DNA of 64,000 nt from Iphione sp. A-MEVVRFRX5 (lineage: Eukaryota). The stretch lies in contig OZ320315.1 of assembly GCA_976226885.1 (NCBI GenBank), positions 96,968,001 to 97,032,000 on the forward strand, given 5' to 3'. The position numbers and the translations under genes were made by a program. Below the pieces are notes generated by a model. The model did not search any database. It was not told the DNA's origin and was given only the letters and a program-made list of their open reading frames with translations. Shown here one piece after another: positions 1-64,000 of the stretch. The first letter of the stretch is position 1. Every line of letters begins with the position of its first letter.

Positions 1-1404
1 CAAATGCATAAATTGTTCTAATACTGTGGTAATGGCATTTAGGAATATTTTGGAGGAGCAATAATGTAGACCGCTTGGCTTTGACTTCAGTAGCTTTAGC
101 ACATACTGTTCACTTACCCTCCTAAGGTGTAGTTCAGTTTTGGCTTGTTTGACTCCTATCGTGGTCAGGGGGTTGTTGATTTCAAATGTGGAATTGCCAA
201 TAGTAGCAAAATGTCCGTTCAGCTTTGCGACAACTTCATGAGCATCTAATTGTCTACCATTCTCTCTCATGATAACGATATTATTACTTTTATTTTTACC
301 TAATATTCCAGATAGTAGGCCCCAGTATTTTTTTGGGTTTTGCCTATGATGTAATAGTTGATTACGGTAGTATATCAATTTCTCATTATGTAGTTTAACC
401 GATATCTTAGATTTTAATGCTACTGCTCTGTCGTACATGCATTTATTTTTTAGTCTGATTCCAAGTTTGAAAAGTTGATTTTTTTCTGAAATTAATTTTC
501 TTGTTTCATCTGATAACCATGTATTGGTTCCTGTGAATGAGTTGGTATGTTTCATTGGTGAGATTTTGTTAATACAGCACTCTAATATGTTTGATAAGTA
601 GGTCCAGAGGTAGTCGGGGTCTCTTTCGGTGTAGTATCGAGACCAGTCAGACTGAATTAGCATGTCATGTAGCATGTTGTCATTAATATCTTTCCATGGA
701 CGGTATATATGGTAAGTAAATTCTGATTTCTTTTTTATTACTCTAGTGATAACTTTGATTCCGTGATGGTCACTCAAAAATGTTTTTAGGACTGAGGATG
801 ACGATTGTAGGGTTTTACTGATGAAGACTAGGTCTAGACAACTGCTGGTTGACATGCTGACTCGGGTGGGTTTTGTGATTACTTGAGTTAAGTTGTTGTT
901 GAGACCAATGTGCTTTAGCTCGTTATATATAGCATTATTTTTCTTAAGAGCATCAATGTTGAAGTCCCCCAGTAATAGTACGTTGCTGTGGGTGGTATTA
1001 TTAATTTTGGATAATTGCGAGTCTAGGATGTCAAGGAACTCTCTTACTGATCCTCTTGGCGGGCGATATAATACTCCTACTATGTACTCATGTTTTGTTT
1101 CAGTGGTGATTTTGATCCAGAATATTTCTATATTTCGATTGCTATTGACTAGTTCAGTTTGCATGTCTGCACCTATATTATTACGTAAGAACATAAGGAT
1201 ACCACCTCCAGCACTGTACGTCCTGTCTAGTCTCGTGATGTTGTAGCCGTTTATGCTATTTAGCCATGATTCACTGATGGCTATAACGTCTGGGGTATGC
1301 TTATTCACTAAGATCTCCAACTCTGGCATCTTATTTTTTATACTTCTCATATTGAAATAGAGAACCGTCAGGTGGTCATACTGTTCAATTTTGGCGTTAC
1401 TCAT
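1..1404 (-). CDS. LINE ORF2 N-terminal part: APE endonuclease plus linker; open to the window edge, so absent from the ORF track
   Basis: Manual translation from ATG at 1404: MSNAKIEQYDHLTVLYFNMRSIKNK...DVIAISESWLN...GGGILMF...GVLYRPP...LLLGDFNID...TKPTRVS...CLDLVF...LSDHHGI...KKYWGLL. No stop found down to base 1; probable frameshift in the last ~70 nt. Confidence 0.9.
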   Translation of the reverse strand, partial: MSNAKIEQYDHLTVLYFNMRSIKNKMPELEILVNKHTPDVIAISESWLNSINGYNITRLDRTYSAGGGILMFLRNNIGADMQTELVNSNRNIEIFWIKITTETKHEYIVGVLYRPPRGSVREFLDILDSQLSKINNTTHSNVLLLGDFNIDALKKNNAIYNELKHIGLNNNLTQVITKPTRVSMSTSSCLDLVFISKTLQSSSSVLKTFLSDHHGIKVITRVIKKKSEFTYHIYRPWKDINDNMLHDMLIQSDWSRYYTERDPDYLWTYLSNILECCINKISPMKHTNSFTGTNTWLSDETRKLISEKNQLFKLGIRLKNKCMYDRAVALKSKISVKLHNEKLIYYRNQLLHHRQNPKKYWGLLSGILGKNKSNNIVIMRENGRQLDAHEVVAKLNGHFATIGNSTFEINNPLTTIGVKQAKTELHLRRVSEQYVLKLLKSKPSGLHYCSSKIFLNAITTVLEQFMHL

Positions 1405-1811
1405 ATGTTAGAGATGAAAAGTAATATGAAATGTTGTTTTGATATATGGCTTATGGTCGATAGTATTTGACGTAGTATATTTATGTTGGGCCGGGGGAGT
1501 TGAAAGTCTTGAATAGTTGTCCAGGTCTCATCAACGAGGCCAGTGGATGCTAACATATATGATTTTATTGTTATTATTAACAAGCATATGCGGTAGGTTG
1601 ATACATGTCATGCCATAATAAAAAGACATGAAGTATTAGATAATACAGGGTGACATTCATAAGGCAATATACATTTGAAAGCAAGTAAATGAAGGGTTTA
1701 TACATGGCGAAAAAAGACAGTAATTGTAAAATGGACTGAATTCAAACACAGTGATACAAATGACACATATGAACACTCATGAGGCGAGGCCGTCGGTTAC
1801 AGTTCATGTAA

Positions 1812-2494
1812 TTATTCATGGAGTTTGTGCAGGAATTTTACCAGTTTGGTGACCATTTCTTGGCGTCCTTGATAATTCAGGTGACAGCCATCTTCAAGCA
1901 ACTGGTGTCGGTTGGTGTCCCGGCCATTAGATCGTCCGTGTATCACGCTACCGATATGTCGAGTTATCAGTCCGTGTGACCTGTTGAAGGCGCGGATACC
2001 ATTGTTGATCCCATGCATGGCGCCATTGAGAGCCCGCTGGACTGCATTGACCGATTTGCCTGCAAAGAATTCTCCGCGCAGGTGACTGTTTGTTGTATTT
2101 TTGTACATCAGGGCAAAAGAATTCAGAGATCACGACAAATGTATATGGCATACGTCTAGTTATTCTGTTGTAACATGTCTCAACTAGAAGTGATATTCTA
2201 AGTTGAATATTCGAAATGTCATCATCTGGAAGGTATATCTGTCTGCAGATCCTACCATCCCCTATGTCACAGTTCCTATTCATTGCGGTGATTTGTCCCT
2301 ACCAACAGAATGATATAAAGTGGGGTACATAGAAAATCATAATCGATTACCTTGCGCGTTATGCCCTCGAATCCAATGCCAGGATATGCCTCAACTGTTA
2401 CTGAGATCCCTCGATTGAGAAGATCCTGCTGGAGTGTCCTTCCATGCAAGTCAGTGAATAGAAACACTGACGGAGGGCACCCTCCTATGTTCAT
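1812..2494 (-). pseudogene. SGNH/GDSL esterase-like LINE ORF, frameshifted
   Basis: Three overlapping ORFs give block I FTDLHG (Ser replaced by Leu), block II YPGIG, block III LVGTNH and block V EDGCHL. Confidence 0.8.
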
Positions 2495-2739
2495 TGTGTC
2501 TTGTGTGACTGTGTAGTTGTATGACTAGTGGTCTCTGATTCGAGGCCAATCCTAGTTCATTGATTTGTGTGTGGTGTTGTGTGGTCAGGTAACGTTGTGT
2601 TTTCGGTGTTAGCAGTCTGTGAGTTCGGTTGTGTCTGCAGTGTCTGCTTCGGAATGTGTCTTCTAGGTTTGGGTGTTGGGCGCTGTTGTGTGGCAGTGTT
2701 CACTGGTTCCCTGCGTAGTTACGGTTACGGTTACGGTTT

Positions 2740-3560
2740 TGCGTACTAGGACGCAGGGGCTTCGCCTATTCAGCAGCCCAATAACGTGTGACAGCATGTG
2801 CAGTGTACCGAAGTGCACTTGCACTCACCCCCTCTCGCCAGGGTTACAGTGGGTTGGGATACCCACCGGTGTGCTGTACACCTTCTTCGCTGACCGAAGC
2901 CAGCACGGGACCGAAGTCCCAGGGTAGGTAGTACTCACTCAGTCAGGACGTTGACGGGAGTTCACAGGCGCGATCTAACTTTCCATGCCCACCACAAACG
3001 GGACATCCTCAGGGCCCCCCCGGAACTATGTTTTATGTCGGGCCGGGGGAAAACGACGGCGGGCCAACTCGGAAGTGGCTCAGGCATCCGTGACGATGAT
3101 TGGCAGGTGTCAGTGAGTATAGAGTGGGTGGGTGCTCAACCAAGCGTGAAGTGCCGTACATACACGGTATCCCAACAGGTCAAATCCGTGCACTAACGCC
3201 CCCACCGACAAGGTTACAGTGGCTCAGTGACCACCAGCGCACAAACACTTCACGGTGCAGCCAGGCGTGATGGGTCGTACTATGACTGCCACGTCACTCA
3301 CCCCCTTCCAACAGGGCAACAGTGGTTTGGTAAGCCCACCGGTGGTCTGGCTACACAGTGACAAACGTATGTGTTCTTCAGTAGTAAGGGATGTCCCATT
3401 CCACAAACACTGAGAACTAGCACCACAAAGGGTTACAGGCTGGTCAAAACCAACAGCCCTGCTTGTACGTGTCACACTATGGAAGAGTCCTGCCCACTCT
3501 CTCTGCTGAACACCTACCTCTCAAAGCACGTCCGCACAGCTCCACTCCCGAGAGGGTCCT
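2740..3560 (-). ncRNA. Candidate structured RNA element (copy A) between the ORF1 and SGNH ORFs
   Basis: Homologous to 24220-24990 (76/79 identical at 3272-3350 vs 24662-24740). Contains a CCCCCGG/CCGGGGG stem with GTCG/CGAC pseudoknot and three C(UUCG)G hairpins at 2802-2920. Function is inferred. Confidence 0.5.
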
Positions 3561-5145
3561 GGCCACGTAGTTCCGATCTAACTCTGACCAGGATGTCCCC
3601 TGTCCAATTCGAACCCGTGTATGTGTCTTGACCAATCAGGTCTGAGCGCAGACTTGCCGACGCACCCCATTCGCTATCCTGAGACGCTTCTACTAATTTA
3701 TATTCACCCGTTGCAAGGAGTTTGTTGCGAATTGTTTCATTCTGTTTGAATTTCGCTAATGTAACTTCATGCATGATTGTTTTTTGTCGCTCAGCAGATA
3801 GCGCCTCATTACTTGTTAGCGTCTTGGTCTTACGTGTGATTAGAATTTGGTCACTGATCCCCATTATGTCATTTTGAAGGGTAGTGTTTCCCATTTCTTC
3901 GGCTATGATCGCTTTGTATGCTTGTTCGGTGGAGTTGTAGGTATTGTTGTTGAGGGCGAAGTTAACATTTGAATGTGCTTGATAGGGGGTGGTTTTTACC
4001 AAAGAAGGCCCATGAGGTGTTTGTTGTGCGCTCTGAGGCCTTTTCTAGGCTTAGACCAGGTGGTAGTCGATGAAGCGTTTTTCCTGTGTATGCATTGCCA
4101 TTTATAATCACTTTGTTACCCTCCAACTTTGTTTCATACTGAAGGCTTTTTGCTAGGTGGTGAATACTCCGCAGCTTAGCCCTATTCATTTTTTCTGCGG
4201 GGGTTAGTTCATCGTTTACCCATATGTTGCGTAGGGTTTTCAAGTTACCCCTGCCTAGCAAAATTTGCCTGCGACTCTCGAGTTTAGTGAAGCATATCCT
4301 GACATCTCTGACCTTTTTCTCTGCTTTCTGACCTATCCGGTAACAGCTGTCGATGTCATTAGAGCTGAAACCTGGGTATGCTTTTTGAAAAATTTCAGTT
4401 AACCTTGCTCTTAACCGTTGATAGTTTTCACCCCCTTCTTCAGGTAGCCCTGCCACAATTAAATTGTTTGATCGAGTGTCACGCTTTAATGTTTCCATTG
4501 CTCATTTAAGTTTGCAATTTTGTTTAGAATGCTTTGGGGAATAGCTGCTTCTGATTTCGTGGATTTCTCAAGCAATTCTACCCTTGCCTTGAGTGCGGCA
4601 TTTTCTGATTCTAGGTTTACAATTCTCTCTTTTTGGTTGAGGAGACTGGTTGTTACTTCACTGATTCTGGCATTACTGTCCTGTATCCCCTTACTGAACG
4701 TGTCATGGAATTTTTTGGTTTCTGAGATATGTTCACTTAGAATACCACTGAACTGCTGAAACATGTCGTGCATGTCTTTCTTTATGTCATTAAACATACC
4801 TTGCGCCATGACGGGGTTTGTTGCTTCACTATTGTTGGACTGTGGACTGCTGACTTAACAACTTAAGCGATTTAAGTACATCATCTCTGTCCAGTGTTAA
4901 GCATAGTGATGATTCTGAGTACGATAGTCTTCTCTGTTTTTCTTTGGTTCTACATTAGAGTCAAGCGGGCTTACCTCTTTTCTTTTGACCCCGGTATCTT
5001 TTGTGTTGGGTATAGGTGTTTCTTCCTTTGGTCCGGTGTTCTCGGATAATTGTATCGGTGTTGATACGGTTGGTGAGGTTAGGACTGCGTCAACGTATGT
5101 TGCAGCCATGTCCAGTAGTATGTTGCTTGAGGTGGCGGCGTCCAT
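3514..5145 (-). pseudogene. LINE ORF1: disordered N-terminus, coiled coil, L1-type RRM/CTD, NADAR (YbiA-like) domain
   Basis: ORFs 4897-5145, 4486-4809, 3962-4498 and 3514-4002 join through small indels. RRM-like RSNNLIVAGL...IDSCYRIG...IWVNDELT. NADAR AFFGKNHPLS...NSTEQAY...LAKFKQN...KLLATGEYKLVEASQDSEWG...TGSNWTGDILVRVRSEL. Removing one base at ~3965 fuses the last two ORFs. Confidence 0.9.
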
Positions 5146-5314
5146 TGTCTCCTTGTGTCCGAGAAAAAATCCAAGTGCATCCTCCTCTAATTCACTGAAT
5201 ATTGGTTAATTCTTACTTAAATGTAATCACTGGTGTGTAATATGCACTGTTGGCATTATTTTGTCAATGGTTGGTCCAGTATGTCTTAAGATTTAAGGAA
5301 AAAGGTTGACGCTT

Positions 5315-6104: not shown

Positions 6105-6985
6105 CTATGAATGGCTTTGTTGGTCGTTACTTTCCCATGTCATTCTTTCATTGTGACACCAGGTTATGGTATATTTAAATGCCCTTGTGATGTTTTTGAG
6201 TTCCTGAATACTGTCCCTTGTCCCCTTACAATGAAAGTTATCTGTCATCTGCATAAAGCATGATATCCATGTTACTGGGTATATTTTCGGGGATTCCATT
6301 TATACACATAGCGAATCCTCAAGGCCCAAAAGTTCTTCTTTCACCCAGAACATCAAATGCCTTGGTTAGATCAAAGGCTACTACTGATACTAGATATGCT
6401 TCATTCAGTGCAATTCTTCAGTATTCTTCAGCCTGCTCCTCCTAGTTCTCTTTTTCCTTCTTGAAAAAAATGTCTTAAGCGAAGGCAACATTGACTCCCT
6501 TTTCCATTTAATTCGAATGTCATTGACGTGGCACCATTTGTTTAGTTTTGCTAGCTCTGTAATCAGGGTTCCATCAACGTCTGAAATACCGTTACTAGAG
6601 CATAAAATCACGTTATCTGCATACGGTATGCATCTACCTTTCCAGAAACATTAATGAATAAGGAGAAGAACATTGGTCCCAGGATACTCCCTTGTGGAAC
6701 ACCTATGTCTAGTGCCATGACTGAGCATTGGTCCCAGGACACTACCTTGTGGAACACCTAGGTCTAGTGCCATGACTGAGGAATGATTAATAAAATACGT
6801 GTTGAATGGCTGAATTTCATTTTTCCAATTTACGAAGCAGTACTGAGTGCTGAATTGAATCAAACGCTTTTTGAGAATCTACAAATATACCACCAGTCAC
6901 TATCAATAATGACATTATGCAGTGTGTGAGGTTTTACCTCATTTATTGCATGCATGGTCGACTAGCCTTTACGAAAGACAAACTG
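6105..6985 (-). pseudogene. LINE RT fragments (two YADD-region pieces) with a 55-bp tandem duplication at 6671-6780
   Basis: QFVFRKG*ST, GIFVDSQKAFDSIQH, GVPQGSVLGP, YADN; second piece DIMLYADD at ~6290. Confidence 0.8.
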
Positions 6986-6989
6986 GATG

Positions 6990-7930
6990 TAGGTGCTCAA
7001 CTTATTGATGCCTATGTTTTGACAAGAGAATGTGACTTGACCATTCAGATTGGGAAGTGGTCACTTGTAAAAACGACCATTGCTGGGAATACACTTGAGG
7101 TAATTCTGAAATAGTTTCACCAAACATCTTGGATTTGTGGTCTGACTGTAATGCCTAACAACACTATGGGTAGCGTTAGAGCTCACGTGACCAGTAACTG
7201 TTTTGGCAAGCCTCCCATTGTACTCGTGGTATGTTCGACCATCTCTCTTGACCCACACTATACTGCTCTGCCATAAAGTTGGAGTGTTCATCTTTGGCTC
7301 TAAAGCCGACGATTTTGCAGTTATAATAATATACAGCATATGACGTAAGCTTGTGCTGTATGATCCCCAATAACATTGCTTCCATAATGTCTGTTCATCT
7401 TCCACGATGATGTCCCTATGCCCTTCGCCAATAACACTTTTCTGCGTGCTTTAAGAGCATCACGAAAAATTTTGAAATGGGGAGTGTCTTTCTTTAGAAG
7501 CCAGACATGGGATCTTTTGAGGTTGTCCTGCATGTCCCTCTGTATTCCTGCTGCCATGTTCATCAGAGTGCCTGAAAAGCAAAATATGCATTTTGAGAAT
7601 TATGACAATGAGGCAACCTTAAGAGACTAAAGTTTGTTTGAAATGCCACTTACCCGGGGGGATAATCAGAGTTGTCTTTCTTTCGGATCTCTGTAATAAA
7701 TCTTGCGAGCCAATAGTCCATCTTGGGAAGATTCTGTGTGGTCAGATCAGGAATTGGCCATTGTGGGTCCTGCTTGGACTGTGGTTTCCAGCTTCTCCAG
7801 GTATGCCATTCTTTGAACAGAGCGATTGTCCATTGTGAGGCAAACTGTGTGTTTCAAGGAATTCTCTGGTTAAATTGAGTCTGGAATGGATCAATATAAA
7901 ATTTTCGTCCATTCTGGTGGTTGGCATCCA
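6990..7930 (-). mobile_element. Crypton-type tyrosine recombinase (DUF3504-like) fragment with a spliceosomal intron
   Basis: Exon ...QWTIALFKEW...MDYWLARFITEIRKKDNSDYPPG|gtaagt (~7652); acceptor ttttcag|G-TLMNMAAGIQR...FRDALKARRKVLLAKGIG...YYYNCKIVGFRAKDEH...YNGRLAKT...NPRCLVKLF. Confidence 0.8.
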
Positions 7931-8449
7931 CCTGACTTGAAGGGTGGGTTTCTAAAATTGAAATTGCAATTAAGATTCAAATGTAAGGTATAATGCAGTA
8001 CAATATCACCGATTGTAGTACAATGCGGAATAATGGATGTAACGAATTCTCAAGTGAGCATATTCAATGTTGTGCATGTAAGTAAACAATACAGTGCCAG
8101 GTAAATCAACATGGATCATACAATGCAAAGAAAGTTAAGTTAGATATATATTGCTTCATACAGGAGACCCTATAGTACCAATGTTCGCTCCATTGAGGCG
8201 ACCTCTCTCTGTTGTGTCCACTAATGTGCATACAGTCACAATAATCCTGCCTATATGTCGTCCCTTGTCAAATAATGCCATCTTTTTAATTATCCACCAC
8301 TTGGTTATGAAACCTGCATCAAAGTAGGTGAGTTATTGTTTACATGAACATATTACAGTTTCAATGACAATAATTAGGGACGGGTGCATGTTAAATGGTA
8401 AGAATTGTTAGCTACCGGACAACCTACATTGAGAGTCACACTTTACCGA

Positions 8450-10540
8450 AGCCCTCGTCACAGTCACAGGCACAGCACACAATAACCGCTCACGTCATTT
8501 CTAGTCCACCCTAATGTACCAAGTACACCATCCAATCATTCCATATATCTCTGTAGGATGATTCATCTTCCCCTTTCATACAAAACAAGTACGCTCACAT
8601 ATCATTCAAGCCTGTCCTTACATTGTATTTATCACACATGCCAAGCAGCATCATGTAGGGTTCCCTACCCTTCATGACGCTGCTATGCCCGATGAGGCTC
8701 ACCCCACAATACCCCAAGAACCCTAGACAAGCTCCAAACAGTTTAGCAGAGAGGACCCCATGATCCTGTCCATGCTCAGCATATGCTGATCCTTAGCTTC
8801 ACAAGGTAGCGTTCCCCACTGTAGGATTCCTCTGTAATGCAGTGACCTGGTGAACTTCGACGATTTTGGTCAGGCTACTCTCCCACTACGCCTCCCCCAC
8901 AGCCCTGGTGACAGATTTTATCCTCTGGCAGTAGACCCAGATGCATCAGGCGATGTACTACTGCAATTACTCTCACTTCTGTTGGTTCTGGAACCCTTAA
9001 ACTCCCACGTTCCTTAGAAAATGTAGAAAATGTGTTGGGACTCTGCCTGCGGTTGGCCTTCACTGCTAGTCTTGCACAGCGGTTCAATCTGGAGCCTTAC
9101 ATCATCTGATGCACACGCCCTATATAGGGTAAAGACTTGAGTACATTAAGTGTGTCAGCACCAGACTGCAGCGGGAGCATGAACTAACTTCCGAGCTTTA
9201 GTGCTGCATTATCATGGAGACGTACAAGCCTTCATTTAGGAACTCCCAGCTGTTGCACAAAAGTTTTCCCACCGCTGTGTCTGTCCCGTGGCCTTTTCGA
9301 AACCCATGTTGACACTCAACTTCTTCCTGGTCTCTAGCTTGCTGGCTAGTCTCTGACAGAACCATGTCTCGCATAGCTTCCCTGGCAGGGGAAGTATGCT
9401 GACTGGCCTATAATTGGTGAGTTGTTCTTGTCACCCTTCTTGTGCACAGGGCACACCCTGGCCACTTTCTACTTCCTCGGATATCTGCCCATACCCAGAC
9501 ACTGTCCAACGATCCATGTTAGGAAAGCAGGATGATGCATCAAAACTGGTTTTAGTATCCTTCTTCTCAGCATACCATCCAACTCTGACGACTTAGTTGC
9601 CTCACCTCCTCCACACTTCGAACGCAGTTCAAATTTGTCAATTGCCCCCCCCCCAGCTCACCGCCTTGTCTAGTGAGTCTGTCATTGTATACCTCGCTCA
9701 AATGCACAAGATCATATAGACCACAATCTATTATTAGCAGACATCCATCTTTGTCAACCTTGCAATGGATAAAATACTCCGTTATGTCACTAATCTTTCC
9801 ATTATGGATTATATGAGTCTGCAAAGTGTAACAATTGTGAGTCAATTCAAAGTTTATATTAAGCCCTCGGCCATCTGCAAAAAACAATATCGTATTATTC
9901 AGGTACTGTATTTCCAGTCATAGCATTAATAGCAAAATTGATGTGATCCCGTTGGTATACCTCAACAAGCTACCCGCTCGATGCGCACACGTGGCAGATT
10001 CACTGTTCCTATGTCAGAGCCCTGAGGATGCTCAGCAATGTGTATCTCTCACAGATTAGAGGGTCACAACTGACAAATAGCCCTATACTTTGGTCATTGT
10101 GGGGAGTTCCGTTTTTCTTTTCCTCTTCCCTCATGAGGATAGTTCGAAGCAATATCAACATACGTCCAAGCATGTTCCTTCCGGGATAGTCTCCTTTGCT
10201 CAGAGTGTCCACTTTGTAATTCATCCCTGAGCCCCAGAACGTATCCCCAGTCACTGTCTTTTTCCTTTTTAGTGGAGTTGTATGTTTGGGATTTATGGGC
10301 CTGTTGGTGATGGTCGTGTCATCCACAACAAAGAGGAAGTTCTCCAGAGTATTGTCTGAGAGTGTATTGTCTATATCGGTGTTTTTATGCGTGCCTCTAA
10401 TCCCTCAAATACTAGGGATATTAGGTTGGATTTCCTGCGTATATCGAGTGATACCTCGTATTTGCACTAGCTGCAATGAAACAATTGTGAGACTGATCTA
10501 AACCTGTGGTCGAGATATTCCTTCTTTGTTGGTTCGTCGC
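8450..10540 (-). mobile_element. Highly degenerate LINE: ORF1 remnant with NADAR C-terminus (10130-10260) and RT
   Basis: EVSLDIRRKSNL (RRM start); TGDTFWGSGMNY...KGDYPGRNMLGRMLILLRTIL (NADAR C-terminus); RT KVARVCPVHKKGDK...NYRPVSILPLPGKL...HGFRKGHGTDTA at 9280-9480. Confidence 0.75.
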
Positions 10541-10733: not shown

Positions 10734-11030
10734 TTACTTTGGTTCAACAAAACTGCACATTGTGTTACACTGGAGAAATCCTCTAGCACATTCATCTTGA
10801 ACTGAGACTAACATACTTACTGGAATGGTGTGCTGTAATATGGAAAATTCTTTGAGAAGGCCAATGACTCTCTCAACATGTATATGTATAGAGGATATCT
10901 TTCTAGATAATTCCACTTCCTTTGCTGAAAACCCTTTCCTGTTCTTACAATAAATCAGCTAAAATTTGGTCACCATCGGAACACACTGTGCCGGTGGTAT
11001 TGCCATGGCTTTGTCTCCGTTTTATATGGA
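10734..11030 (-). pseudogene. ISL2EU/Harbinger-like DDE_Tnp_4 transposase C-terminal fragment
   Basis: FSAKEVELSRKISSIHIHVERVIGLLKEFSILQHTIP resembles the DDE_Tnp_4 C-terminal motif (S..EV..TR.IA..RIHVER.IG.LK.F.IL). Confidence 0.75.
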
Positions 11031-19440: not shown

Positions 19441-19499
19441 AGAGAAAATTCTCATCAAAATCAATCCCTAGAAATTAAACATTCTTTACTTGATCCAAT

Positions 19500-42380: not shown

Positions 42381-42389
42381 TAGTCTTAT

Positions 42390-49180: not shown

Positions 49181-49182
49181 CT

Positions 49183-49573: not shown

Positions 49574-50450
49574 CTATACAGCAAATTTTGACAGAGTTTT
49601 AGAGAGATCCGCTGAAACAATGCTCCTTAGGAATGGGTCCAATGAGTTCCAACTCTGTATACCATTATAGTGCACAGACTTTTTTACCAATTCTAGACGA
49701 GGTTTAGGTACATAGAGTAGGTCACCATCATGTTGTCTGGTGTTGCCTCTTTGTTGGTGAAGAGGAAGCAGTTTGTGTAGATACATATTATGAATGATGT
49801 TTACAGTGAACCATTTACATCTGTGGAATGTGTCTTTCAAGTCATATAATATATGGAGATCAGTACTTGATGGCACTTTCTGGTTACACTAATGCATGGT
49901 TCTGCAGTTTCTGCAGTTTATCTAGGTTAGACTTTTTGCAGCAGCCTAGCATTGCTGTTGAGTAAACTTGTGGCCTAATGAATGCTTTGTATAACTTTAA
50001 CATATCTTGTGAGCTGAGATAATTTCTTATTCTATACATCATTTTTGTTTTTTGAGTTACTGTTTTGGCTACCTTCTCAGCTTGCAGATCAAATTTCATA
50101 TTGTGCTCAAAGATCACTCCTAGGTATGTGTAATGATTGACATATTCAATTTTCTGATTTCCTATGTAAACATTGGCATCTGCCTGCTCTTGTTTAGGAC
50201 AGAAAGAGAGGATTGTTTTTTCGGTGTTCATAGTTAGCCTGTTAATGGTACACAATGCAACCATACTATCTAGTGCACTTTGAGTTTTTGAGAGTAACCC
50301 TTGACTATCCTCACTTTTGACCAGAATAAGAGTGTCATCTGCAAATAGAGTTACAGCATCGTCCAATGAATTTGGAAGGTTATTAATGTACAATGAAAAT
50401 AAGAGGACCTAGAGTTGATCCTTGAGGTACTCCTATGGAGACATGCCTTG
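49574..50450 (-). pseudogene. LINE RT 3' half and C-terminus
   Basis: GVPQGSTLG, LFADD, YTYLGVIF, YKAFIRP. Confidence 0.88.
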
Positions 50451-51217
50451 CATTGGATGTAGTGTTGACAATACAGAATTGTTTTATTATTATTATTATT
50501 AAGTCTTTATTTATCCTGGCAAATGTTCATACAATCATGTATTTGCTGCCAGCAAATAACCGAGTAATCATGCTTATTGACAAATATCAAAATAAAAGTG
50601 TTAGTAATGAGTGTTCATGATTCCTTAAATGGTGCTTTGTATAGGCTTTGACACAGTACCTTTGTCACAGTACCTTTATAAATAGACTTATAGTATTCGA
50701 GAGGAATCTTTAGCACTGCAACAGTAATGTCTTATAATGGTTGATACTTTTAACTCTAGCTACATTAAATTATGATCATTGTAGTTCTAGACATCATCCA
50801 TTCCATATTATTGGCTATTGAAGTAGGTATTATTATTACCATTATTTTTGTAAGGGCAACGCCCAGTTCCAACTTCTGTTATGTCTAAACAGCATCCATT
50901 TTGAGTTCAATTAGGACCAAGTCCAGCCATTACTCTACTTAACTCTGTATTATGTTAATATATCCTTTTTCACACAGTGACAACGTCCGTCTCAGCTAAA
51001 ACCCCCTTCAGTATTTCTAGTGACAATGTCCAACTCAGATATTACTTCCTCAAATAACATATAGATATTCTACACATTTTTGACTTGAGATCAATTATTA
51101 ATTATTTATTAATTATTAAATGGTTAGATGGTCACTAATACAAACACTGTGTAACTTATTGTTCTGGGCAATACCCCCTCAGTTCTGATGTTGCATTCTG
51201 AATTTTCGAGTGCCATT

Positions 51218-53927: not shown

Positions 53928-54638
53928 AAATCACTCCATAACATCTAGGCTCAAATAAAATATGGTTAGTAAACATTGTACAAATGAACGTTACAAAAAA
54001 TTGTAAATACAATACAATACAATATTATAACAAAAATACAAAATAAGATCAAACTTATTCTAAACTAATCTAAAGTAAAGTATCGACGCACCGCTCCTAA
54101 CATTTGATGATAAATAATTGTTAAAGTTTAACTCTCACTTTAGCAGAACAATATCAATCTAATTTATTCAAGATAATACAGGGTCATGTGGGGCGTACCC
54201 CAAATGAATGTTCAACATACGATTAGTACATAACAAATAACACTTGTGATTCAATTCAGTATTGTAAGTAGTGGGCATATAATGTAAAGCATGCACGGTA
54301 GTACAACGTACATCACGGATCTCATACAATTATATGTAAATTATGCAACTTTAATAAATAGATGTTTGATTTCATGTGCAGTAATGCAACGTGTGATGTA
54401 TACCTAAACTTCATTAAAACACGTGCCTAATTAGTCGCATCATTATCAACCTATGTATGACATTGATAAGCAGTAAGCTATTCATAAATTGTGTACAGTC
54501 AATTGAGGTAAAACCTATCAATCACAACTATAGTTCATGTGTTTTGTATATATTCATTATGCTAAGACCAATAGTACAACGTACATCATAGTCCCAAGCT
54601 GTTTATATATTACCACCATGGTCCATTAAATAGATGAT

Positions 54639-55350
54639 TTAATGCAGAATTTTCCAAAAAGTAGTTAAATGACACCCATCCACATAGTGTTGCTGTCTGT
54701 GCCTCCAGTGCCCATGGCTCCTGGTATGCACGACTGAATGTGTCCAAGGAGTGGGGGTGCCTTGACTTTTGTTAAGTTTCGTTATTTCTTGATTTAGTTT
54801 CGTCACAGTAGCAAGCAACATAGCTTGTATCATACCAATACTTCCAGTATAGCCTGTATAGCCATTCAGAGTATAATTATAGCGTATGAAGTCGATACAA
54901 AACAATGTGCAGTACATGACTACTGTATACGGATAACGATATTGAATCGCAGCTCTGGCACTCCACAAACGATATATAACGTCATTTACTGCTTCGTCTG
55001 TATTGGAATACCTTGGAACTAAATATCAGATATTGTCCTCATTCTTCATCCTAATGATTTTTGTTAAATCATTCCCACCAGCGAGGATCACGATCGTACT
55101 TGGATAGGGATACCAATCACCTTGTAAGATTACATCAAGGATGTCCTGTATCTTTGCGCCTGGGTAGACATGCACCGTTACATTCCAGCCAAATCTATTG
55201 AAGATTGGCTGTAAGTCCCGACCATGACTGCTATAGAATGTGTACGTGCTTGCGCCTGGGTAGACATGCACCATTACATTCTAGCCAAATCTATTGAAGA
55301 TTGGCTGTAAGTCCCGACCATGACTGCTACAGAATGTGTACGTGCTGGTC
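54639..55350 (-). pseudogene. SGNH esterase-like ORF with an in-frame 96-bp tandem duplication (~55155-55346)
   Basis: FYSSHGRDL, VYPGAKI, LAGGNDL, YVDGCHL. Confidence 0.8.
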
Positions 55351-55443
55351 TTATGACATGCTGGCCTAGCAGTGTTTCTCAGTGAGCGCAGTACACCACA
55401 ATCTGTAAAATATCATAATGGATCAACAATCATACAGACACAT

Positions 55444-56979
55444 TTACTCAGCATCAATTTCCATTCTATCACGAATTCTCATTAAAACTTTTCCCATTTC
55501 GTTTTGCCCTGTGAAGGTACCATTCTTTAACGCTTGAGACCTCCGCGTGCCATTTGCTCCCCAGAATGGGTGTTTTGTGGCTTCAATTAATACTCTGTTA
55601 CCAGTACTCAGAAGTAATTCCTTAAATTCCTCATTGGAAACAAACTTTGAATAGACAAGTTCATCCATTATCTCTACTTTTAGTTCTTCCCAACCTTCAA
55701 TATTAGGGAGATCTTTTCTGATTGTTTTAAGTGACTGATAGCCTTATCCACAGGCTATCTTGGATTGAACGCACGCAGCTTTTCCTTTGCTGTACGTGTA
55801 AGCTTGCTCAATCCTTGCAAACTCTAATTTATCCCAGGAAACAGAACATGGGTACAAGTTGGACATAATAGAACCCTTGCCTGCAAAAACCAGCGCATCA
55901 TCTTTCTGATGTTGCTCTGTTTTCAGGCAGGACAAGTATTGGTCTGGTATTTTGTCCTGATTGAGTCATACCAGGTTTCACCCAAGAGTAGCCTGTCACC
56001 ACTAACTGCTACAGTGAATTGTGGGTATGAGGTCTGGACAAACCTCAAAATTTTCTTAAACTTGATCTGCGCATCACGTTGTAGATGCGTTAGATCATTA
56101 TTCAGCCAAATATTCTTTCCCTTTAATTTCTTTTTTTCTCTTAGAATCTGGTCTTTAATCGAGACTCTCAAAAATTTCACAAAAATTATAGGTATGCCTC
56201 GCTTGTTTGAACGACGTGTTTGAAACAGTTCATCAATGTCATCCTCGTTGACATTAGCATCTAGCGATTCAAACAGCCCCAATACCGCTAGTAGGAGGTT
56301 GTCTCCTTCATTAATGTTAAAACCGTCAATAAACATGTTATTCCTTCTACTTTTACGATCCAAATTTTCCAAAATGTCTATATTGGACTTTTTACTGTCC
56401 TGTAGTTGCTGTCTCAAGGCTGCGTTTTCCTTTTGTAATTCTGTTACTGACAATTCTAATACTTCTATTCGTTCTTTATGATCAGAGAGACTAGAAATAC
56501 AGGTGTCTACTTTACTACTGAGAGAGGCTACATTTTCATTTATTTTCTTAGTCTCTGTTAAAGTCAACTCTGTTTTTTAATATTTCATTCATTAGTGCAT
56601 TCATTTGACGTTGTAGGGAGCCTTTCTTAGCATCTACTGTTGCCTCTGAGTTTGGACTGTTCTCCTTTTTTTGCTTAGAACCACCCCTAATAGCTTCACT
56701 ACACACAGAATTTACAAAAAATGGTTTAATAGAAATTTGTTTACCTTTAGGAGTCGGTTCTGTGTGCTCAGTACCTGTTGTCCCGTCAGTCTTACCACTC
56801 GTGGTATTCACCTTTGTGCTCTGAATTACACTCTGACTTGAGTCAGCGTTCAGTACGGAATGGGTACCAGTGTTACCCTCGTTCAACATGTCTGCGTGCA
56901 GGCTTGACTGATTCCCCGCCTCCCCACCATCCATACATTCAGTGGTGGGGCATGATCTAGTGACATTATGGTCTGCCAT
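55444..56979 (-). pseudogene. LINE ORF1: coiled coil, L1-type RRM/CTD, NADAR
   Basis: RKSRRNNMFIDGF...IWLNNDLT; VFAGKGSIMSNLYPC...IEQAYTYSK; in frame across one stop: IMDELVYSKFVSN...LLLSTGNRVLIEATKHPFWG...FTGQNEMGKVLMRIRDRM. Confidence 0.9.
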
Positions 56980-58453
56980 TCTAAATAAAGATCAGTATCC
57001 GACCACATATAAAGTATACAATATTTCTGTTTTTAATCTAGATACACTATTATGAAGCAACCAGTTATACAAGTATCAAAGCGATGGCAGAGCAGGTCTT
57101 ACACACCCATCATCTAAACAGTTTTGCACGCAAATTCAATAAAATTAGTACCTTTACTTTACCGGTTCAGTCATGGTACATGTAGCGCACTTCAACATAC
57201 ACCCAATATCACTCACCACACTCGGAGAGAAATCAAAACCGCGTTTTAGTACCAATAATCAAGCTTAGTTCCACTTTTAATCAACACCCCCATAATCTTT
57301 GTTGTTCATACCGTCATAGTTTCAGTTACTGGGATAAACAACACTTCAATACATTATATACAACCACAAAACAATATGGAGCAGTACCTGTCTACCTCAT
57401 GCCGGCCATTTAATTTTTCTGTCGCTCAGATAACTATTAAACCATCTCAGAGCCATATCATCCATATCGTAGTTGCGTGACAGTTTGTCTAATAGAATTC
57501 CATGATTGACAGTATTGAAGGCTTTCCTGAGTTCAACAAATATGGCGTTTATGAACAGCTTGTCATTAATTCCTGCATAAATACTGTTAGCCACGCTGAA
57601 GATGGCATCCCTGGTGCCCCTAGATTTCCTGGAACCGAATTGTTCTCTAGCAAGTATATCATTATGTTCGAGGTGTACATATAACCTATTGAATATGATT
57701 TTTTCCAAAATTTTGGCAGGAGCAGGTAGTAGGGAAATAGGTGTAAAGGGATGACCTTAGCCAATTTCGTTTTATCGGGGAAAATACCAGTGGCTATTGA
57801 TAGATTCAAGACATGCGTTAGTTGGTCAATGCAGGATGCTATACAGTGCCAAAAAACATGTGTAGGAATACCCGTAATATTTGCATTTTTCTTTTTGTTA
57901 ATGTCATTGATTATGTTTAATACTTCAGACCTCGTTGATTTCATGAGTCTAAAGATTTAGGTTTGATTTGAAGTTTGGGAAAGCAATGCATCAGGACTGC
58001 CAGTGGAGTGATCCACTGGAGCAGATGGCAGTGACGATGCAATTGCTTCTGCGACATTGGTGAAGTACTGATTTAAGAGATTAGGTATGGCATTTGGCTC
58101 TACAATACTATTATCATGCCTGATTGATATTGGACGACATGATTTCTGCTGTAGTCCTGCTAATTCTTTCATGATAGACCAGTATTCTTGACCATTTTTT
58201 TGTGATTCGTAGAGCTTCCTCTTGTAGTAGAACATCTTGTGAGTGTATACGCTTCTCCTGATTTGGTTTTTTAGATGGTTGGCTATTCTGATTGAGTCAA
58301 TATCCTTTCTTTCCTTTGCTTTGCGACGATAGTAGTTTTTAAGTCTGATACTCCTGAGAAGTGCAGGAGTCATCCATGGCGTGTTGTTGTTGGTACGAAT
58401 CCTTTTTGTGGTTTCTGGAGCGATTCTGTCGGTTGATGATCTAATATTGGATT

Positions 58454-59341
58454 CTAGAATGGCCCAGGCAGTGTTAACATTGTCCGCATTGTATAGATTG
58501 TACCAGTTACATTCACCAAGAGATTTTCTTGTGAGGTGTTCCTGCAGTTGACTACTTTGTATATAGGCGAGTGGTGGTTGTGCCTGTTAATCTTTTTGAG
58601 AGCAAATGTCATGTTATGATCTGATAAAGCTAGATCTATTGTTCCTACATCAATAATATGCTGACTGTTGCTGGCTAGAATATCAATGCTGATGGAAGAT
58701 TTGCCACTAATACGAGTGTCAGTGTTGATGTGGTTATAGAGAGAGTAAAGGTTTAGTAGATAGGTAAGCTTTTTCCTATTAGGGCAGTTCGTGTTCATCA
58801 TGTTAATGTTGACATCCCCTAGCATGTAGATATCTCTACTCAGATTTAAATGGCTCAACAGGTTGTCAAGATGTGAGATAAATTGTGTAACTGAGTCTGA
58901 CGGTGGTCTGTAAACATTAATAAGGATTGATTTTTTCATTTTTCCTGGAGTGATTTCAACTACCTCCATTTCGATATGCTCATTCACTATGTTAAACCTA
59001 TTATCAAAATCATTAATATTGAAGTTCTCTTTAATGTATAAGGCTAGGCCTCCTCCACACCTGTTGGCTACAGAGTCAATAGTGCTATCACATCTGTCGA
59101 CATGCAGCATGACATAATTATCCAGTGTAAAGTAGTTATTTGCATGATTATTGTTGAGCCAGGTTTCTTGTAGGGCAATAATGTCAATATCGAGGTCCTT
59201 CATGTGTAATTCAAGTAGTGCATGTTTATTCACCAGACTGCAGACATTTTGCTGAGCAATGTATAATCCTTTCCTACTAAATCTTTTTTTGGTGACTATC
59301 ATTGGTCCCACAGAAGATGTACGTTCATACATATATTCCAT
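58454..59341 (-). CDS. LINE APE endonuclease
   Basis: QQNVCSL, LQETWL, GGGLALY, VYRPP, LGDVNI, SIDIL, SDHNM. Confidence 0.92.
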   Translation of the reverse strand: MEYMYERTSSVGPMIVTKKRFSRKGLYIAQQNVCSLVNKHALLELHMKDLDIDIIALQETWLNNNHANNYFTLDNYVMLHVDRCDSTIDSVANRCGGGLALYIKENFNINDFDNRFNIVNEHIEMEVVEITPGKMKKSILINVYRPPSDSVTQFISHLDNLLSHLNLSRDIYMLGDVNINMMNTNCPNRKKLTYLLNLYSLYNHINTDTRISGKSSISIDILASNSQHIIDVGTIDLALSDHNMTFALKKINRHNHHSPIYKVVNCRNTSQENLLVNVTGTIYTMRTMLTLPGPF

Positions 59342-59990
59342 TGGTCATACATAGAAGTTAGATGAGGAGCATATATAGGGCAGTAATTGATAATAATTGA
59401 GGGCACATAAAGAATGGTGAGTGAAAAAGAGATACGTACACAAAATAGATATGATATCAATTTCCTGACGTAAGTGAACATTCACTATCAGTAATAACAT
59501 CATGGTGACGATCAATGGTTAGAGCGCATACTTTGACAAATGTATGCATTGCATATAATTAAACGTGATGGAAGAAGTGGGTGGGGGAGAGAGGCAAGTC
59601 TTGAGAAAGAGGACAGATTGTCCGAATGTGTAATTTAGGGACATATGTATATACATAAAATGATACAGATTGCTTGATGTACAAATACTAATGAGCAGAG
59701 TTGCATAATTGCATAGCTATAAATTCATACATACATACATATACATATCATTGATTGATCAACTTGATAATGATTACAATAATACAAAAACAAATATAAG
59801 TGACAATACGTACTTATAGCATGAGTATGGTGCCTGAGGTCTACCACCAAAATATTGATGAACACAAGGGGCGCAGCCATAGATGTACAAACGACATGGT
59901 TACGAGGATCGGAGATAGGGACAGAGAAGAGGTAGGGTGTTGATTGATCAACTGTATCTCTTGTCATATCATTGCTAACATTGACTTAAG

Positions 59991-60632
59991 CTACAGATTG
60001 CGTTCAACAGACTTGATAATGGTGTTAGCCCAATGGTTGACTGTGTGGTTGTTTGGGTGGAGCCCGTTATATAATTTGGCAAAGAAACACTGATATTGCT
60101 TTTTCTGGTACTTGTGCACCGGAGCCTCAAGCCACGGTGTTGCATAATGATACATTTGATTTTTCTTAACAATCAGATTGTTAATTCGCCTAATTCCCTC
60201 ATTGAATTCTGACTGGATTTTGTAGCTGGTGTTTATGATTTTGGCTGGGTCATGAAGTTTAAACTGATTATATTCGTTAAAGTTCATGGAGCTCATCTGA
60301 CACCAGATAAATTTGGTTTGAGCTGGTAAAGAATCAATTTTCCAGACATGGCGGGACATCACAGAGGAAAAGTGGTTGAATAGCTCCGTGGCAGTAACAA
60401 ACAGGGGGAATGTTGGATCTGATGATGAGTCACGATAGATCAAGTCATTTATGCCTGCAAAGATTAGGACCAGGCTATATGAGGCCAGGGCATCATTCAT
60501 ATATACCATTTCCATGACTTGGTCCAGCTTTCCCCCAGGCTTGGAATAGACATCAATTCTAATGTGTGCAGGAGCAATGTTGCTGATCGCTTGTTGAAGT
60601 TTCAGCCCTCTGGAGTCCGACACCAACAGCAC
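59991..60632 (-). CDS. SGNH esterase-like domain of LINE ORF1
   Basis: LVSDSRG, SKPGG, FAGINDL, YNGLHP (Asp replaced by Asn in block V). Confidence 0.85.
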   Translation of the reverse strand: MLLVSDSRGLKLQQAISNIAPAHIRIDVYSKPGGKLDQVMEMVYMNDALASYSLVLIFAGINDLIYRDSSSDPTFPLFVTATELFNHFSSVMSRHVWKIDSLPAQTKFIWCQMSSMNFNEYNQFKLHDPAKIINTSYKIQSEFNEGIRRINNLIVKKNQMYHYATPWLEAPVHKYQKKQYQCFFAKLYNGLHPNNHTVNHWANTIIKSVERNL

Positions 60633-61150
60633 TTTAGTTCGGATCGATCTTTGTGTATTTCCTCTAATGCAGATTGTAAACTATCCACAGTTGATTGTAA
60701 AATGGTAAGCCATTCGGAGTGGAGTGCAGTAGCAGCAGTATTTGAAGGGGTTGTTGGATTTGTGCTGTTAGCGGTGGTGGTGTTAGTTGGTGTGACATTC
60801 GTGGATTGATTATCAGACAGTGGCTGAAAACTGTTATGAATAGGGGTACTAGGAACAGACTTATCGTGATAATTGTTGCTCCCATTCTTCCCGTGCGTCA
60901 GTCCACTTCTACGGCCGTGCGGCTTCGAGGGCGGCCCGTGGTTCTTTCTGTCACCCGCACGCGATGGGGTCCCAGGGGGGGTTGAATTCAAACGTCTAGA
61001 TGACCGTTGAGTTTGGGTCTCGACTGGGTTCGTGTTGGCTGCTTTCCTCCCCATCGTGGAAGTCCTTCTGAGTGAGCTGTTCAGTCTGTTATATGCTGCT
61101 AATGAATGATTATGTAGTGATTACTAGCATTAGTTCTGGTTAGAAGTGCC

Positions 61151-61199: not shown

Positions 61200-63335
61200 A
61201 ATTCCAGTGGTGTTGTGCCTGGTAGACAAAACTGTTCCTGAATACGGATATCCCTTCCGATTGGCGTCTGAATGGATATTTGATTACCAACACCAAATCT
61301 TGTTATTGTTTGTCTCCTCCTTTCACAAAACCCCAGATGAAACATATCTGTAATGAGCAGTAAAGATAGATAGTAAGTGAAATTATCGAGCAGATTTATT
61401 ACCTTTAAAATTAACCATTTTTCAACCTCGTCAGTAGCCGATTTATTATGTAAAACACATCTTCTTATTGCCCTGTACCAATTCACCCGCTACCCTCCCA
61501 ACTCCCCTTTTCTACATGATAGCTGAAAACTAAAACCATAATCTAAATGAGGAAGCACAAAAGCAATAAGTAATTAAGTAATTTCTACAGCTGCCTAGCA
61601 AATAACTTGCTTTGTTTAACTCATGTATTTTGTCGTTAATAAAAGGAGCAAAGGAAAGTCTATCATCTAGAATATAGCCCAGGACGCTGAATTGTGTTAC
61701 TTTCCCAAGATAAATGCCATTTAATTTTAGTTCGAGCCCAAAATTTCGTGCCTTACCAAAACTCATCACTTTAGTTTTTTGCTCATTAATTTTTAGGCCA
61801 TTATCTCTACACCAAGTTTCAATATGTAATAGTGAGTATTGAAGTTTCTGATGTAACGCCCACAAGCTAGTCCCAGAACCCACTACAGTTACATCATCTG
61901 CATAAACTATTAAATTACAAGGTTTCCCTGCATCAAAAATATCCTTTACATGAACATTAGCGGCCCCAAGACAGAGCCTTGGGGTACCCCAAGGTTTATT
62001 TCAAGTGCCGAAGATATTGTCTGATTACATTTTACTCATTGAACTCATTGAGTCAAATATGAATGGAACCATTGGCATATTTTGTCTCCCATCCCATACC
62101 ATTTTAATTTATTTAAACGCAGTTTGTGGTTAATTAAATCAAATGCTTTAGACATATCTAGAAAAACTGTACCCATGTATTTCCCAGAATTAATCAGTTC
62201 ATAAATCCTTTTTAACAAAACCCCGCAAGCTATTGAAGTCCCTCTCCCCTGTCTAAAACCAAATTGATTTTGACAAAACAAATTATTTTTCTATATATAT
62301 GAATAAATTTGGTTAGATACGATATGTTCCAGAATTTTACTTGGTGCCTGCAATATAGAGATAGGTCTGTAATTTTCTGATTTAAAACAACTCGACTTTT
62401 TCTGGAGAGGAGTAATTGTTGCATGTTTCCATGACGCTGGGACAACACCGTCCTCTAGTGAACGATTGAGTTAAGTAAAGAAATATACAGTGCATTTTAG
62501 GCTGTCCTTCAGATATCTCATAGGTAAACCTTCTATTCCCGAAGGTTTACAATCCTTCAGTTTCAAGATAAGTTTGTATACTTGGCCAAAACTTTTCAAA
62601 TTCTATTAAATTTGGTCTGTCATTCTTTGAGTATGGTCCAATATTCAGTTTTAGTCCAAATTGCAGTTTCTCGGCTATTTCTTTAAATTTATGATTAAAT
62701 TCTTCAGACACTGCTGCCCCCTCTATAATTCTCTCACCATCCTTCAATTTGATATCAATCCCACCCTTACGTGATCGACCAAAAGCAACACTACTAATTA
62801 AATTCCACAGTCTCCTATCGTTCTCAGTTTCCAGGTAATTATTTTTAATTTCTCTGGCTAATTTGTTTACTAAATTACGAAAATAATTATACACCTGCTT
62901 GTAATCTATTATACTTGACTTTATCCATCTTCTCCTGTATTGTCCCGTTCTCTACGGAGATTCAATAATCGTTGGTCCAACCATCCTGGCGTTGTAAGTC
63001 TGTGATATCTTCATATGGACAAAGTTTATCTATTACACCCATAACATTATCCACCCAACGTTCCCAAATTGCATCTACACACATACCTGGGTCAATTTCC
63101 CAATTACAATCATCAAGCATCTCTTGTAGTATTTGAAAGGTATAGTGCTTATCCATTTCTTACAGACCGCATCACTTTCTGAGCTTTCTGTCTTGATTTT
63201 TTAAAATCGACATAAGTAATATAATGATCACTATAACCACTGATTAGAACACCACATTTTATATAGTCCAAAGTTGTGGTATAAATATGGTCAAGACATT
63301 CTAGCCATTTATGGGTCACTTCATTCACCAACTGT
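61200..63335 (-). mobile_element. LINE ORF2 remnant (APE end, linker, RT, C-terminus)
   Basis: CLDHIY, SDHY, QFGFRQG, FLDMSKAFD, GVP, YADD, LGYILDDRLSF. Confidence 0.88.
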
Positions 63336-63339
63336 TTTA

Positions 63340-63770
63340 CACAAGAAGAGATTATTTCAGGATTAACAAGTCAACAAGTGCTTAAACACCATTGTAACTG
63401 GATGAAGATAACAAGCTTGATAATAGTATGGTCTTCAGTATTAAATCTAATAGAGAAGAATAAATGGCATTTTGTGCTCCTAGTCTTACAAGGGATAACA
63501 ATTTACAATACATTCATGTGTAGACACTCTTTAGTTACATTCAGATTTAGTATAATCTTTTCAGCTCACCTGAAGACCCAATTCTTGAATCTTTCTCCAC
63601 ATGGCCTGAGTCCAATGAAATGTGCATCGCTGGATGTTTGCTCCAGGGAAGTTGGCTTTGATGCCTTTCCATATTGCCACCTCAAAATCGCTTACAAACT
63701 GTGCCAACACAGGCTGATTGGGTAGTGGTTTTCGGAGAGCTTTAAACAGCTGTTTGAACAACAATGTTTA
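63340..63770 (-). mobile_element. MULE transposase catalytic exon (63749-63570) plus following intron
   Basis: FVSDFEVAIWKGIKANFPGANIQRCTFHWTQAMWRKIQELGLQ|gtgag; 180-nt exon flanked by AG and GT. Confidence 0.88.
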
Positions 63771-64000
63771 AATATTACCAAAGTGAACCAATAGAACTCC
63801 TTAGGTAATGCATAGAACTACACAAAATAATAGCTTCAATCAGGATCAGTTAACAATATACATTTCAACTTGAAATATAGGCTGCAAAAGTCAGTAGTAA
63901 TGTATAGATTTGATAGGAAACCAAATACGACCCCTTTCATAAACAACATTTTTAAAAAGAATTTTACATTTTTGTAATCAGCTCTCTCCTCTGAATTTTT

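What the first reader, a model, noticed from the sequence alone, without database searches (positions are those of the whole stretch)
1..64000. All recognisable transposons lie on the minus strand: candidate uni-strand (flamenco-like) piRNA cluster
About 17 LINE segments and 7 DNA-transposon pieces (2 Crypton, 3 MULE, Harbinger, ISL2EU array) are all minus-oriented, and I found none on plus. If 24 insertions were independent and unbiased, the chance of one shared orientation is (1/2)^23, about 1e-7; they are not fully independent. DNA transposons have no intrinsic orientation bias. The fragments are diverse, mostly one or two per family, truncated and abutting, as expected under a trap model where a plus-strand precursor yields antisense piRNAs (established for Drosophila flamenco). 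An intron of a plus-strand gene is the main alternative.
Basis: inference. Interest (0 to 1): 0.8.

Follow-up and report, generated by a model that had tools for sequence, protein, structure and literature searches.

The report
One-strand transposon graveyard, candidate piRNA cluster
Every jumping-gene remnant in this 64-kb stretch whose direction can be read points the same way, as in a locus that makes silencing RNAs (a piRNA cluster), but no RNA data could be obtained to show it.

Summary
Four independent tests found transposon coding remnants only on the minus strand.
- Pfam on all stop-to-stop ORFs of 55 aa or more gave 36 transposon-domain hits among 212 minus ORFs and none among 188 plus ORFs.
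- tblastn of the window's own ORFs gave no cross-strand hit.
- tblastn of 120 external LINE proteins gave 2731 matches, all on minus.
- Reverse-transcriptase and endonuclease motifs occurred 26 times on minus and never on plus.

After joining two LINEs that are split by nested insertions, there are at least 13 independent LINE insertions. They come from different families (median 37% amino-acid identity). Four DNA-transposon remnants share the orientation: two Crypton-like pieces, one MULE, and one Harbinger-type element with a 6-unit tandem array. I found one MULE, not the three claimed. Duplication does not explain the bias, because the array is the only large internal repeat.

No RNA run was listed, so neither transcription nor small RNAs could be checked. 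I found no Gypsy or other LTR content, so the window is not flamenco-like in what it contains.

The scan found this before. Unchecked notes describe a similar one-strand bias in windows from 62 kb upstream to about 620 kb downstream, several naming the minus strand, and one follow-up reached the same reading.

My odds:
- uni-strand piRNA cluster: about 0.45
- long plus-strand transcription unit or intron without a dedicated piRNA role: about 0.25
- other: the rest

The parts
1..5205 (-). LINE A, 5' two-thirds. The RT lies beyond the window start. APE endonuclease 1-1407, esterase-like 1815-2298, NADAR 3517-4044, coiled-coil ORF1 3965-4854.
   Evidence: Pfam Exo_endo_phos_2 and NADAR; tblastn against the reference LINE; external LINE proteins.
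6468..7065 (-). LINE B, fragment spanning the end of the endonuclease and part of the RT.
   Evidence: RT motif B twice and one SDH motif; external LINE proteins.
7064..7951 (-). Crypton-like remnant 1, frameshifted.
   Evidence: Pfam QRICH1 domain at 7653-7853. ORFs 7064-7599 match the DUF3504 ORF at 33283-33642.
9147..10404 (-). LINE C: RT N-terminal fragment 9147-9642 plus a NADAR remnant 10012-10404.
10737..19400 (-). PIF/Harbinger-type (possibly ISL2EU-type) transposase remnant. The DDE_Tnp_4 piece is at 10737-10958. Upstream of it, the 5' region is amplified into about 6 tandem units of about 1370 bp (11091-19400), and most units carry an HTH_Tnp_4 match.
   Evidence: Pfam; self-blastn; unit alignment at 96-97% identity.
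19478..21055 (-). LINE D: RT through to the 3' end, with a 24-bp x3 tail repeat at 19634-19706.
21256..22214 (-). LINE E, RT fragment.
   Evidence: RT motif A at 21510; external proteins.
22405..26913 (-). LINE F: RT 22593-23615, a non-coding spacer 24387-24987 shared with LINE A, and ORF1-like ORFs 25277-26913.
   Evidence: RVT_1 at E 7.6e-24; direct 72% pair; ORF1-like similarity to 37249-37803.
28119..31916 (-). LINE G, near full length and the best preserved. RT ORF of 514 aa, endonuclease 30170-30877, esterase-like ORF 30976-31593, coiled-coil ORF 31536-31916.
   Evidence: RVT_1 at E 1.7e-37 and Exo_endo_phos_2; reading of the translation.
33001..33642 (-). Crypton-like remnant 2.
   Evidence: Pfam DUF3504 at E 2.5e-6.
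34317..37803 (-). LINE H: RT 34317-35687, a NADAR piece 36142-36345 and ORF1-like ORFs up to 37803. This may be two elements.
38600..41460 (-). LINE I: RT, endonuclease and esterase-like region.
42189..42674 (-). Small LINE RT-like fragment (tentative).
   Evidence: 22-aa match at 64% identity to the RT ORF at 22864-23562.
43035..48851 (-). LINE J/L, one element in two halves (43035-44093 and 46178-48851). It is interrupted by an unidentified 2.2-kb insertion at 44094-46303.
   Evidence: The two halves cover adjacent parts of the same external proteins, for example P0014 residues 420-527 and then 553-610. The insertion has no homologue.
49577..61120 (-). LINE M/O, one element in two halves (49577-50664 and 57352-61120). 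It is split by the co-oriented, near full-length LINE N (about 51100-57000: ORF1, NADAR, esterase, endonuclease, RT).
   Evidence: The halves cover P0014 residues 3-554 and then 569-760. Domains of LINE N are shown.
61463..63370 (-). LINE P: RT plus endonuclease.
63564..63767 (-). MULE transposase fragment.
   Evidence: Pfam MULE at E 1.6e-5.

Best explanation
The window lies inside a large transposon graveyard that is, or was until recently, transcribed as a long plus-strand RNA in the germline or gonad. Insertions land in either orientation. Those that are antisense to the transcript are kept, because they feed antisense piRNAs and carry no sense-strand termination or splicing signals. Sense insertions are lost. 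Over time this yields nested, truncated fragments of many families, all on the minus strand.

What is shown: the architecture and the exclusive orientation. What is inferred: the transcript, its direction and the piRNAs.
For: 1. Exclusive minus orientation by four methods.
2. The bias covers two transposon classes with unrelated integration mechanisms: LINEs, and Crypton, MULE and Harbinger-type DNA transposons.
3. The insertions are independent and diverse. There is no internal duplication apart from one array, and median amino-acid identity between LINE blocks is 37%.
4. Nesting occurs in the same orientation, with two LINEs split by later insertions.
5. All copies are dead. The longest ORF is 514 aa.
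6. CpG o/e is a uniform 0.47 with TpG and CpA at about 1.25. This shows long-term germline methylation. In animals with mosaic methylation that pattern usually marks transcribed units (my own knowledge). The genome baseline is not known here.
7. Precedent: strand-bias searches found flam-like clusters of 227-1085 kb, several of them supported there by small-RNA sequencing (PMC10643416).
8. Lead only, not checked: earlier notes report a similar one-strand bias, several naming the minus strand, from -62 kb to about +620 kb, and only in a minority of this genome's windows.
Against: There are no RNA data of any kind. No promoter or cluster boundary lies in the window. AATAAA and ATTAAA are not depleted on the plus strand relative to Markov expectation. 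The tandem array shows no strand asymmetry of substitutions, although with only about 93 changes the test is weak. No Gypsy or ERV content was found, unlike flamenco. Non-coding repeats could not be oriented. The genome-wide baselines for strand bias and for CpG o/e are unknown.
Confidence: 0.45

Rival explanations
1. The region belongs to a very long plus-strand Pol II transcription unit, either giant introns of a host gene or a long non-coding RNA. Sense-oriented transposons are purged because their polyadenylation and splice signals disrupt the transcript. piRNA production is absent or incidental.
For: This selection would give the same orientation pattern. CpG depletion fits gene-body-type methylation. 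No contradicting minus-strand host gene was found.
Against: No plus-strand exon-like domain was found in 188 plus ORFs of 55 aa or more, though short exons would be missed. In well-studied genomes the antisense bias inside introns is partial and weak for DNA transposons (my own knowledge). Here the bias is total and includes 4 DNA-transposon remnants. If the unchecked notes are right, the domain is about 700 kb, which is very long for introns of one gene.
Confidence: 0.25
2. The bias arises at integration and not from selection. LINEs might prefer to insert into or beside existing LINEs in register, or orientation might be set by the direction of the replication fork across a large, unidirectionally replicated domain.
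For: LINEs dominate the window. Two LINEs sit inside other LINEs in the same orientation. The AT skew is negative in all 32 two-kb bins.
Against: The LINE families differ, at a median of 37% identity, so homology-guided insertion is unlikely. Crypton, MULE and Harbinger-type remnants use other integration chemistries and share the orientation. Known replication-linked LINE biases are small (my own knowledge). The bias was noted in only a minority of this genome's windows (unchecked).
Confidence: 0.12
3. The locus is transcribed on the minus strand, either by read-through from LINE promoters or as a sense-strand small-RNA source, and co-orientation reflects that transcript.
For: Strand coherence alone does not give the direction of transcription.
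Against: No known selective reason favours sense-oriented accumulation. The LINE promoters and ORFs here are decayed.
Confidence: 0.08
4. The pattern is due to chance, or it is inherited from a co-oriented block that was multiplied by duplication of units larger than the window.
For: The neighbouring windows could not be read, so duplication with a unit above 64 kb is not excluded.
Against: Within the window there are at least 17 independent co-oriented insertions, with a chance of about 1.5e-5. Duplication would not create the bias inside the unit.
Confidence: 0.05

Closest known systems
Drosophila flamenco and the flam-like unistrand piRNA clusters (van Lopik et al. 2023, PMC10643416)
   Same: It is a large transposon-dense locus of nested, truncated fragments. 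Almost all fragments share one orientation. The size range is tens to hundreds of kb.
   Different: flam-like clusters are defined by Gypsy/ERV LTR elements, and there the strand bias is driven by Gypsy alone. This window has no detectable LTR element and is dominated by LINEs, with DNA transposons sharing the bias. Expression, promoter and piRNAs are unknown here. The host is an invertebrate of unknown identity.
Mosquito core piRNA clusters made by transcriptional read-through (bioRxiv 10.1101/2022.08.22.504762, abstract seen)
   Same: They are one-strand source loci with inserted elements in antisense orientation.
   Different: Those are enriched for endogenous viral elements and depend on read-through from upstream genes. 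Neither point could be examined here.
Antisense bias of LINEs and LTR elements in long introns of host genes (my own knowledge)
   Same: It works by selection against sense insertions inside a long transcript.
   Different: That bias is partial and class-dependent. Here it is total and spans classes, and no exons were seen.

Membership tests
Uni-strand (flamenco-type) piRNA cluster | Transposon-dense locus of nested, truncated fragments from many families | tested here: met
   15 LINE ORF2 blocks, 4 DNA-transposon remnants and two nested splits. Families are divergent.
Uni-strand (flamenco-type) piRNA cluster | Near-exclusive single orientation of transposons | tested here: met
   No plus-strand transposon remnant was found by Pfam, by tblastn with internal and external queries, or by motif search.
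Uni-strand (flamenco-type) piRNA cluster | Long single-stranded precursor transcribed antisense to the transposons from a discrete promoter | not testable with these tools
   No RNA run was listed, and no boundary or promoter lies in the window.
Uni-strand (flamenco-type) piRNA cluster | 24-32 nt, 1U-biased small RNAs mapping to one strand | not testable with these tools
   No small-RNA data were available.
Uni-strand (flamenco-type) piRNA cluster | Size of tens to hundreds of kb | tested here: met
   The bias fills all 64 kb. Extension to about 700 kb rests on unchecked notes.
flamenco proper (somatic, anti-ERV cluster) | Enrichment for Gypsy/ERV LTR elements in antisense | tested here: not met
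   No integrase, gag, protease or env domain and no LTR pair was found. Every RT block matches LINE ORF2.
Giant intron of a plus-strand host gene | Plus-strand exons in or around the region, spliced into one mRNA | tested here: inconclusive
   188 plus ORFs of 55 aa or more gave no domain. Short exons and the flanks could not be examined.
Head-to-tail LINE array produced by target-site preference | Copies of one family, or of families with the same 3' tail, joined tail to head. Other transposon classes are unbiased. | tested here: not met
   The families differ. DNA transposons share the orientation.

The most novel reading that the evidence does not exclude
This window is part of a LINE-dominated uni-strand piRNA master locus of about 0.7 Mb in a non-arthropod invertebrate. 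It traps LINEs and DNA transposons alike and carries gene-body-like germline CpG methylation along its whole length. That would make it a flamenco analogue built from different transposon classes, and it would link precursor transcription to DNA methylation.
Probability: 0.3. Interest if true: 0.65.

Novelty: new member of a known kind. Interest (0 to 1): 0.45.

Why it matters
Well-characterised uni-strand piRNA clusters come almost entirely from Drosophila, with some from mosquitoes. There they are tied to Gypsy-type retroviruses or to viral fragments.

A very large one-strand locus built from LINEs and DNA transposons in another invertebrate lineage would show two things. The trap architecture would be general across animals. 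Selection on orientation would also act on all transposon classes.

The locus would also give a ready, sequence-defined target for small-RNA and long-read RNA experiments in that species.

If it turns out to be a giant transcription unit instead, the total orientation bias would itself be an unusually clean case of selection against sense insertions.

Tried and rejected
- RNA evidence: the look-up of sequencing runs (kind rna, 40001-50000) listed no run. Read laying was therefore not possible.
- Species identification: the closest LINE relatives are only 26-36% identical. Two exact-protein look-ups found nothing. Species-specific literature could not be consulted.
- Polyadenylation signals: AATAAA has an observed/expected ratio of 1.01 on plus and 0.97 on minus. 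ATTAAA has 1.40 on plus and 1.08 on minus. There is no depletion on plus, so the test is uninformative.
- Transcription-coupled mutation asymmetry, using singleton changes in the six array units: there is no asymmetry, but only about 93 changes were available.
- Target-site duplication around nested LINE N: none was convincing.
- Unknown 2.2-kb insertion at 44094-46303: no homologue and no Pfam hit.
- Rfam and tRNA scans for SINE-like or RNA genes: none found.
- Simple regular expressions for MULE and DDE motifs missed the real hits. Those hits were then located by reading translations and confirmed with Pfam.
- Duplication as the cause of the bias: rejected.
- Telomeric retrotransposon array: considered, with no supporting note or repeat found.

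Full report
**Observation.** The window has no N and is about 41% G+C. T exceeds A on the plus strand in all 32 two-kb bins. Long ORFs are strongly skewed to the minus strand. Stop-to-stop ORFs of 150 aa or more number 4 on plus and 33 on minus. ORFs of 200 aa or more number 0 on plus and 14 on minus.

First, I scanned every stop-to-stop ORF of 80 aa or more with Pfam.
- The 59 plus ORFs gave no transposon domain.
- The 106 minus ORFs gave 13 RVT_1, 5 Exo_endo_phos_2, 4 HTH_Tnp_4, 3 NADAR and 1 DUF3504.

Second, I repeated the scan on ORFs of 55-79 aa.
- The 129 plus ORFs gave nothing transposon-like.
- The 106 minus ORFs added 4 RVT_1, 2 HTH_Tnp_4, and one each of DDE_Tnp_4, NADAR, MULE and QRICH1. 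The DDE_Tnp_4, NADAR, MULE and QRICH1 hits were located.

Three further tests agreed.
- tblastn of all the window's ORFs against the window gave 440 minus-to-minus hits, 137 plus-to-plus hits and no cross-strand hit.
- 120 external LINE ORF2 proteins gave 2731 HSPs in 15 blocks, all on minus.
- Conserved RT and endonuclease motifs occur 26 times on minus and never on plus.
- Self-blastn found no inverted repeat pair at all.

**Independence.** The only sizeable internal repeat is a tandem array at 11091-19400. It has about six units of about 1370 bp at 96-97% identity. There is also one 72% direct pair, at 2993-3561 and 24387-24987.

LINE blocks share at most 59% and a median of 37% amino-acid identity, so they belong to different families.

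Alignment to external full-length proteins shows that two pairs of blocks are halves of single elements.
- Blocks 57352-59272 and 49583-50664 cover P0014 residues 3-554 and then 569-760. They are split by the near full-length LINE at about 51100-57000.
- Blocks 46304-46778 and 43564-44093 cover residues 420-527 and then 553-610. They are split by an unidentified 2.2-kb insertion.

That leaves at least 13 independent LINE insertions. Four DNA-transposon remnants share the orientation:
- Crypton-like pieces at 7064-7951 (QRICH1 domain, plus similarity to the DUF3504 ORF) and at 33001-33642 (DUF3504);
- a MULE fragment at 63564-63767;
- a Harbinger-type DDE_Tnp_4 piece at 10737-10958, whose upstream HTH_Tnp_4 region forms the tandem array.

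Seventeen co-oriented independent events have a two-sided chance of about 1.5e-5. I could confirm one MULE, not three. Only protein-coding remnants can be oriented, so non-coding repeats remain untyped. Rfam and tRNA scans found nothing.

**What it is.** The window is a graveyard of dead transposons. The longest ORF is 514 aa. It is dominated by LINEs with ORF1, esterase-like, APE and RT regions, several of which also have a NADAR domain. Some are nested within each other in the same orientation.

CpG o/e is 0.47 almost uniformly and falls to 0.12-0.20 in the array. TpG and CpA are at about 1.25. This indicates long-standing germline methylation. In animals with mosaic methylation, such depletion usually marks germline-transcribed units (my own knowledge). 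Without this genome's baseline it is only a hint.

**Mechanism.** Total co-orientation of unrelated classes is best explained by selection relative to a long plus-strand transcript.

Against membership in flamenco proper: there the bias is carried by Gypsy elements. Here no LTR-type domain or LTR pair exists.

Integration-level explanations, such as LINE-into-LINE targeting or replication direction, fit poorly. The families differ, and Crypton, MULE and Harbinger-type elements share the orientation.

**What could not be done.** No RNA run was listed for the locus. The defining features remain untested: a plus-strand precursor and one-strand, 1U-biased small RNAs.

The genome is not in the protein collection. 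I could therefore read neither the flanks nor species-specific literature.

Two indirect sequence tests were uninformative. Polyadenylation hexamers are not depleted on plus. The array shows no substitution asymmetry among about 93 changes.

**Context from the scan (leads, not evidence).** Notes on neighbouring windows report a similar one-strand bias, several naming the minus strand, from 62 kb upstream to about 620 kb downstream. Similar loci were noted on other pieces, but only in a minority of this genome's 708 annotated windows. One follow-up, 494 kb downstream, reached the same reading, also without RNA data. If these notes are correct, the domain is about 0.7 Mb. That argues against a single intron and against a genome-wide property. 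I could not check it.

| Reading | Odds |
|---|---|
| Uni-strand piRNA cluster | about 0.45 |
| Long plus-strand transcription unit without a dedicated piRNA role | about 0.25 |
| Integration bias | about 0.12 |
| Minus-strand transcription | about 0.08 |
| Chance or large-unit duplication | about 0.05 |

If real, it is a new member of a known kind, distinguished by its LINE and DNA-transposon content.

Noticed in passing
window 3517-4044, 10012-10404, 36142-36345, 47564-47770, 55029-55743 (all minus): Several different LINE families carry a NADAR (YbiA-like) domain between ORF1 and an esterase-like region. The best Pfam E-value is 9.3e-21. The domain recurs in at least five diverged elements.
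   Followed up: partly
window 11091-19400: The 5' part of a Harbinger-type transposase gene (HTH_Tnp_4) is amplified into about six tandem units of about 1370 bp at 96-97% identity. CpG o/e there is only 0.12-0.20, much lower than in the rest of the window.
   Followed up: partly
window 2993-3561 and 24387-24987: A non-coding segment of about 600 bp is shared at 72% identity, in direct orientation, by two otherwise unrelated LINEs. It is the only inter-element nucleotide similarity in the window.
   Followed up: no
window 44094-46303: A 2.2-kb insertion splits a LINE RT. It has minus-strand ORFs of up to 150 aa with no Pfam hit and no homologue in the word-based protein search, so its nature and orientation are unknown.
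   Followed up: partly
window 55154-55346 and 6671-6780: Short internal tandem duplications (96 bp x2 and 55 bp x2) lie inside LINE coding regions. The second duplicates RT motif B.
   Followed up: no
window 1-64000: CpG o/e is a uniform 0.47 with TpG and CpA excess across a transposon-only region of an invertebrate. This implies germline methylation of the whole stretch.
   Followed up: partly
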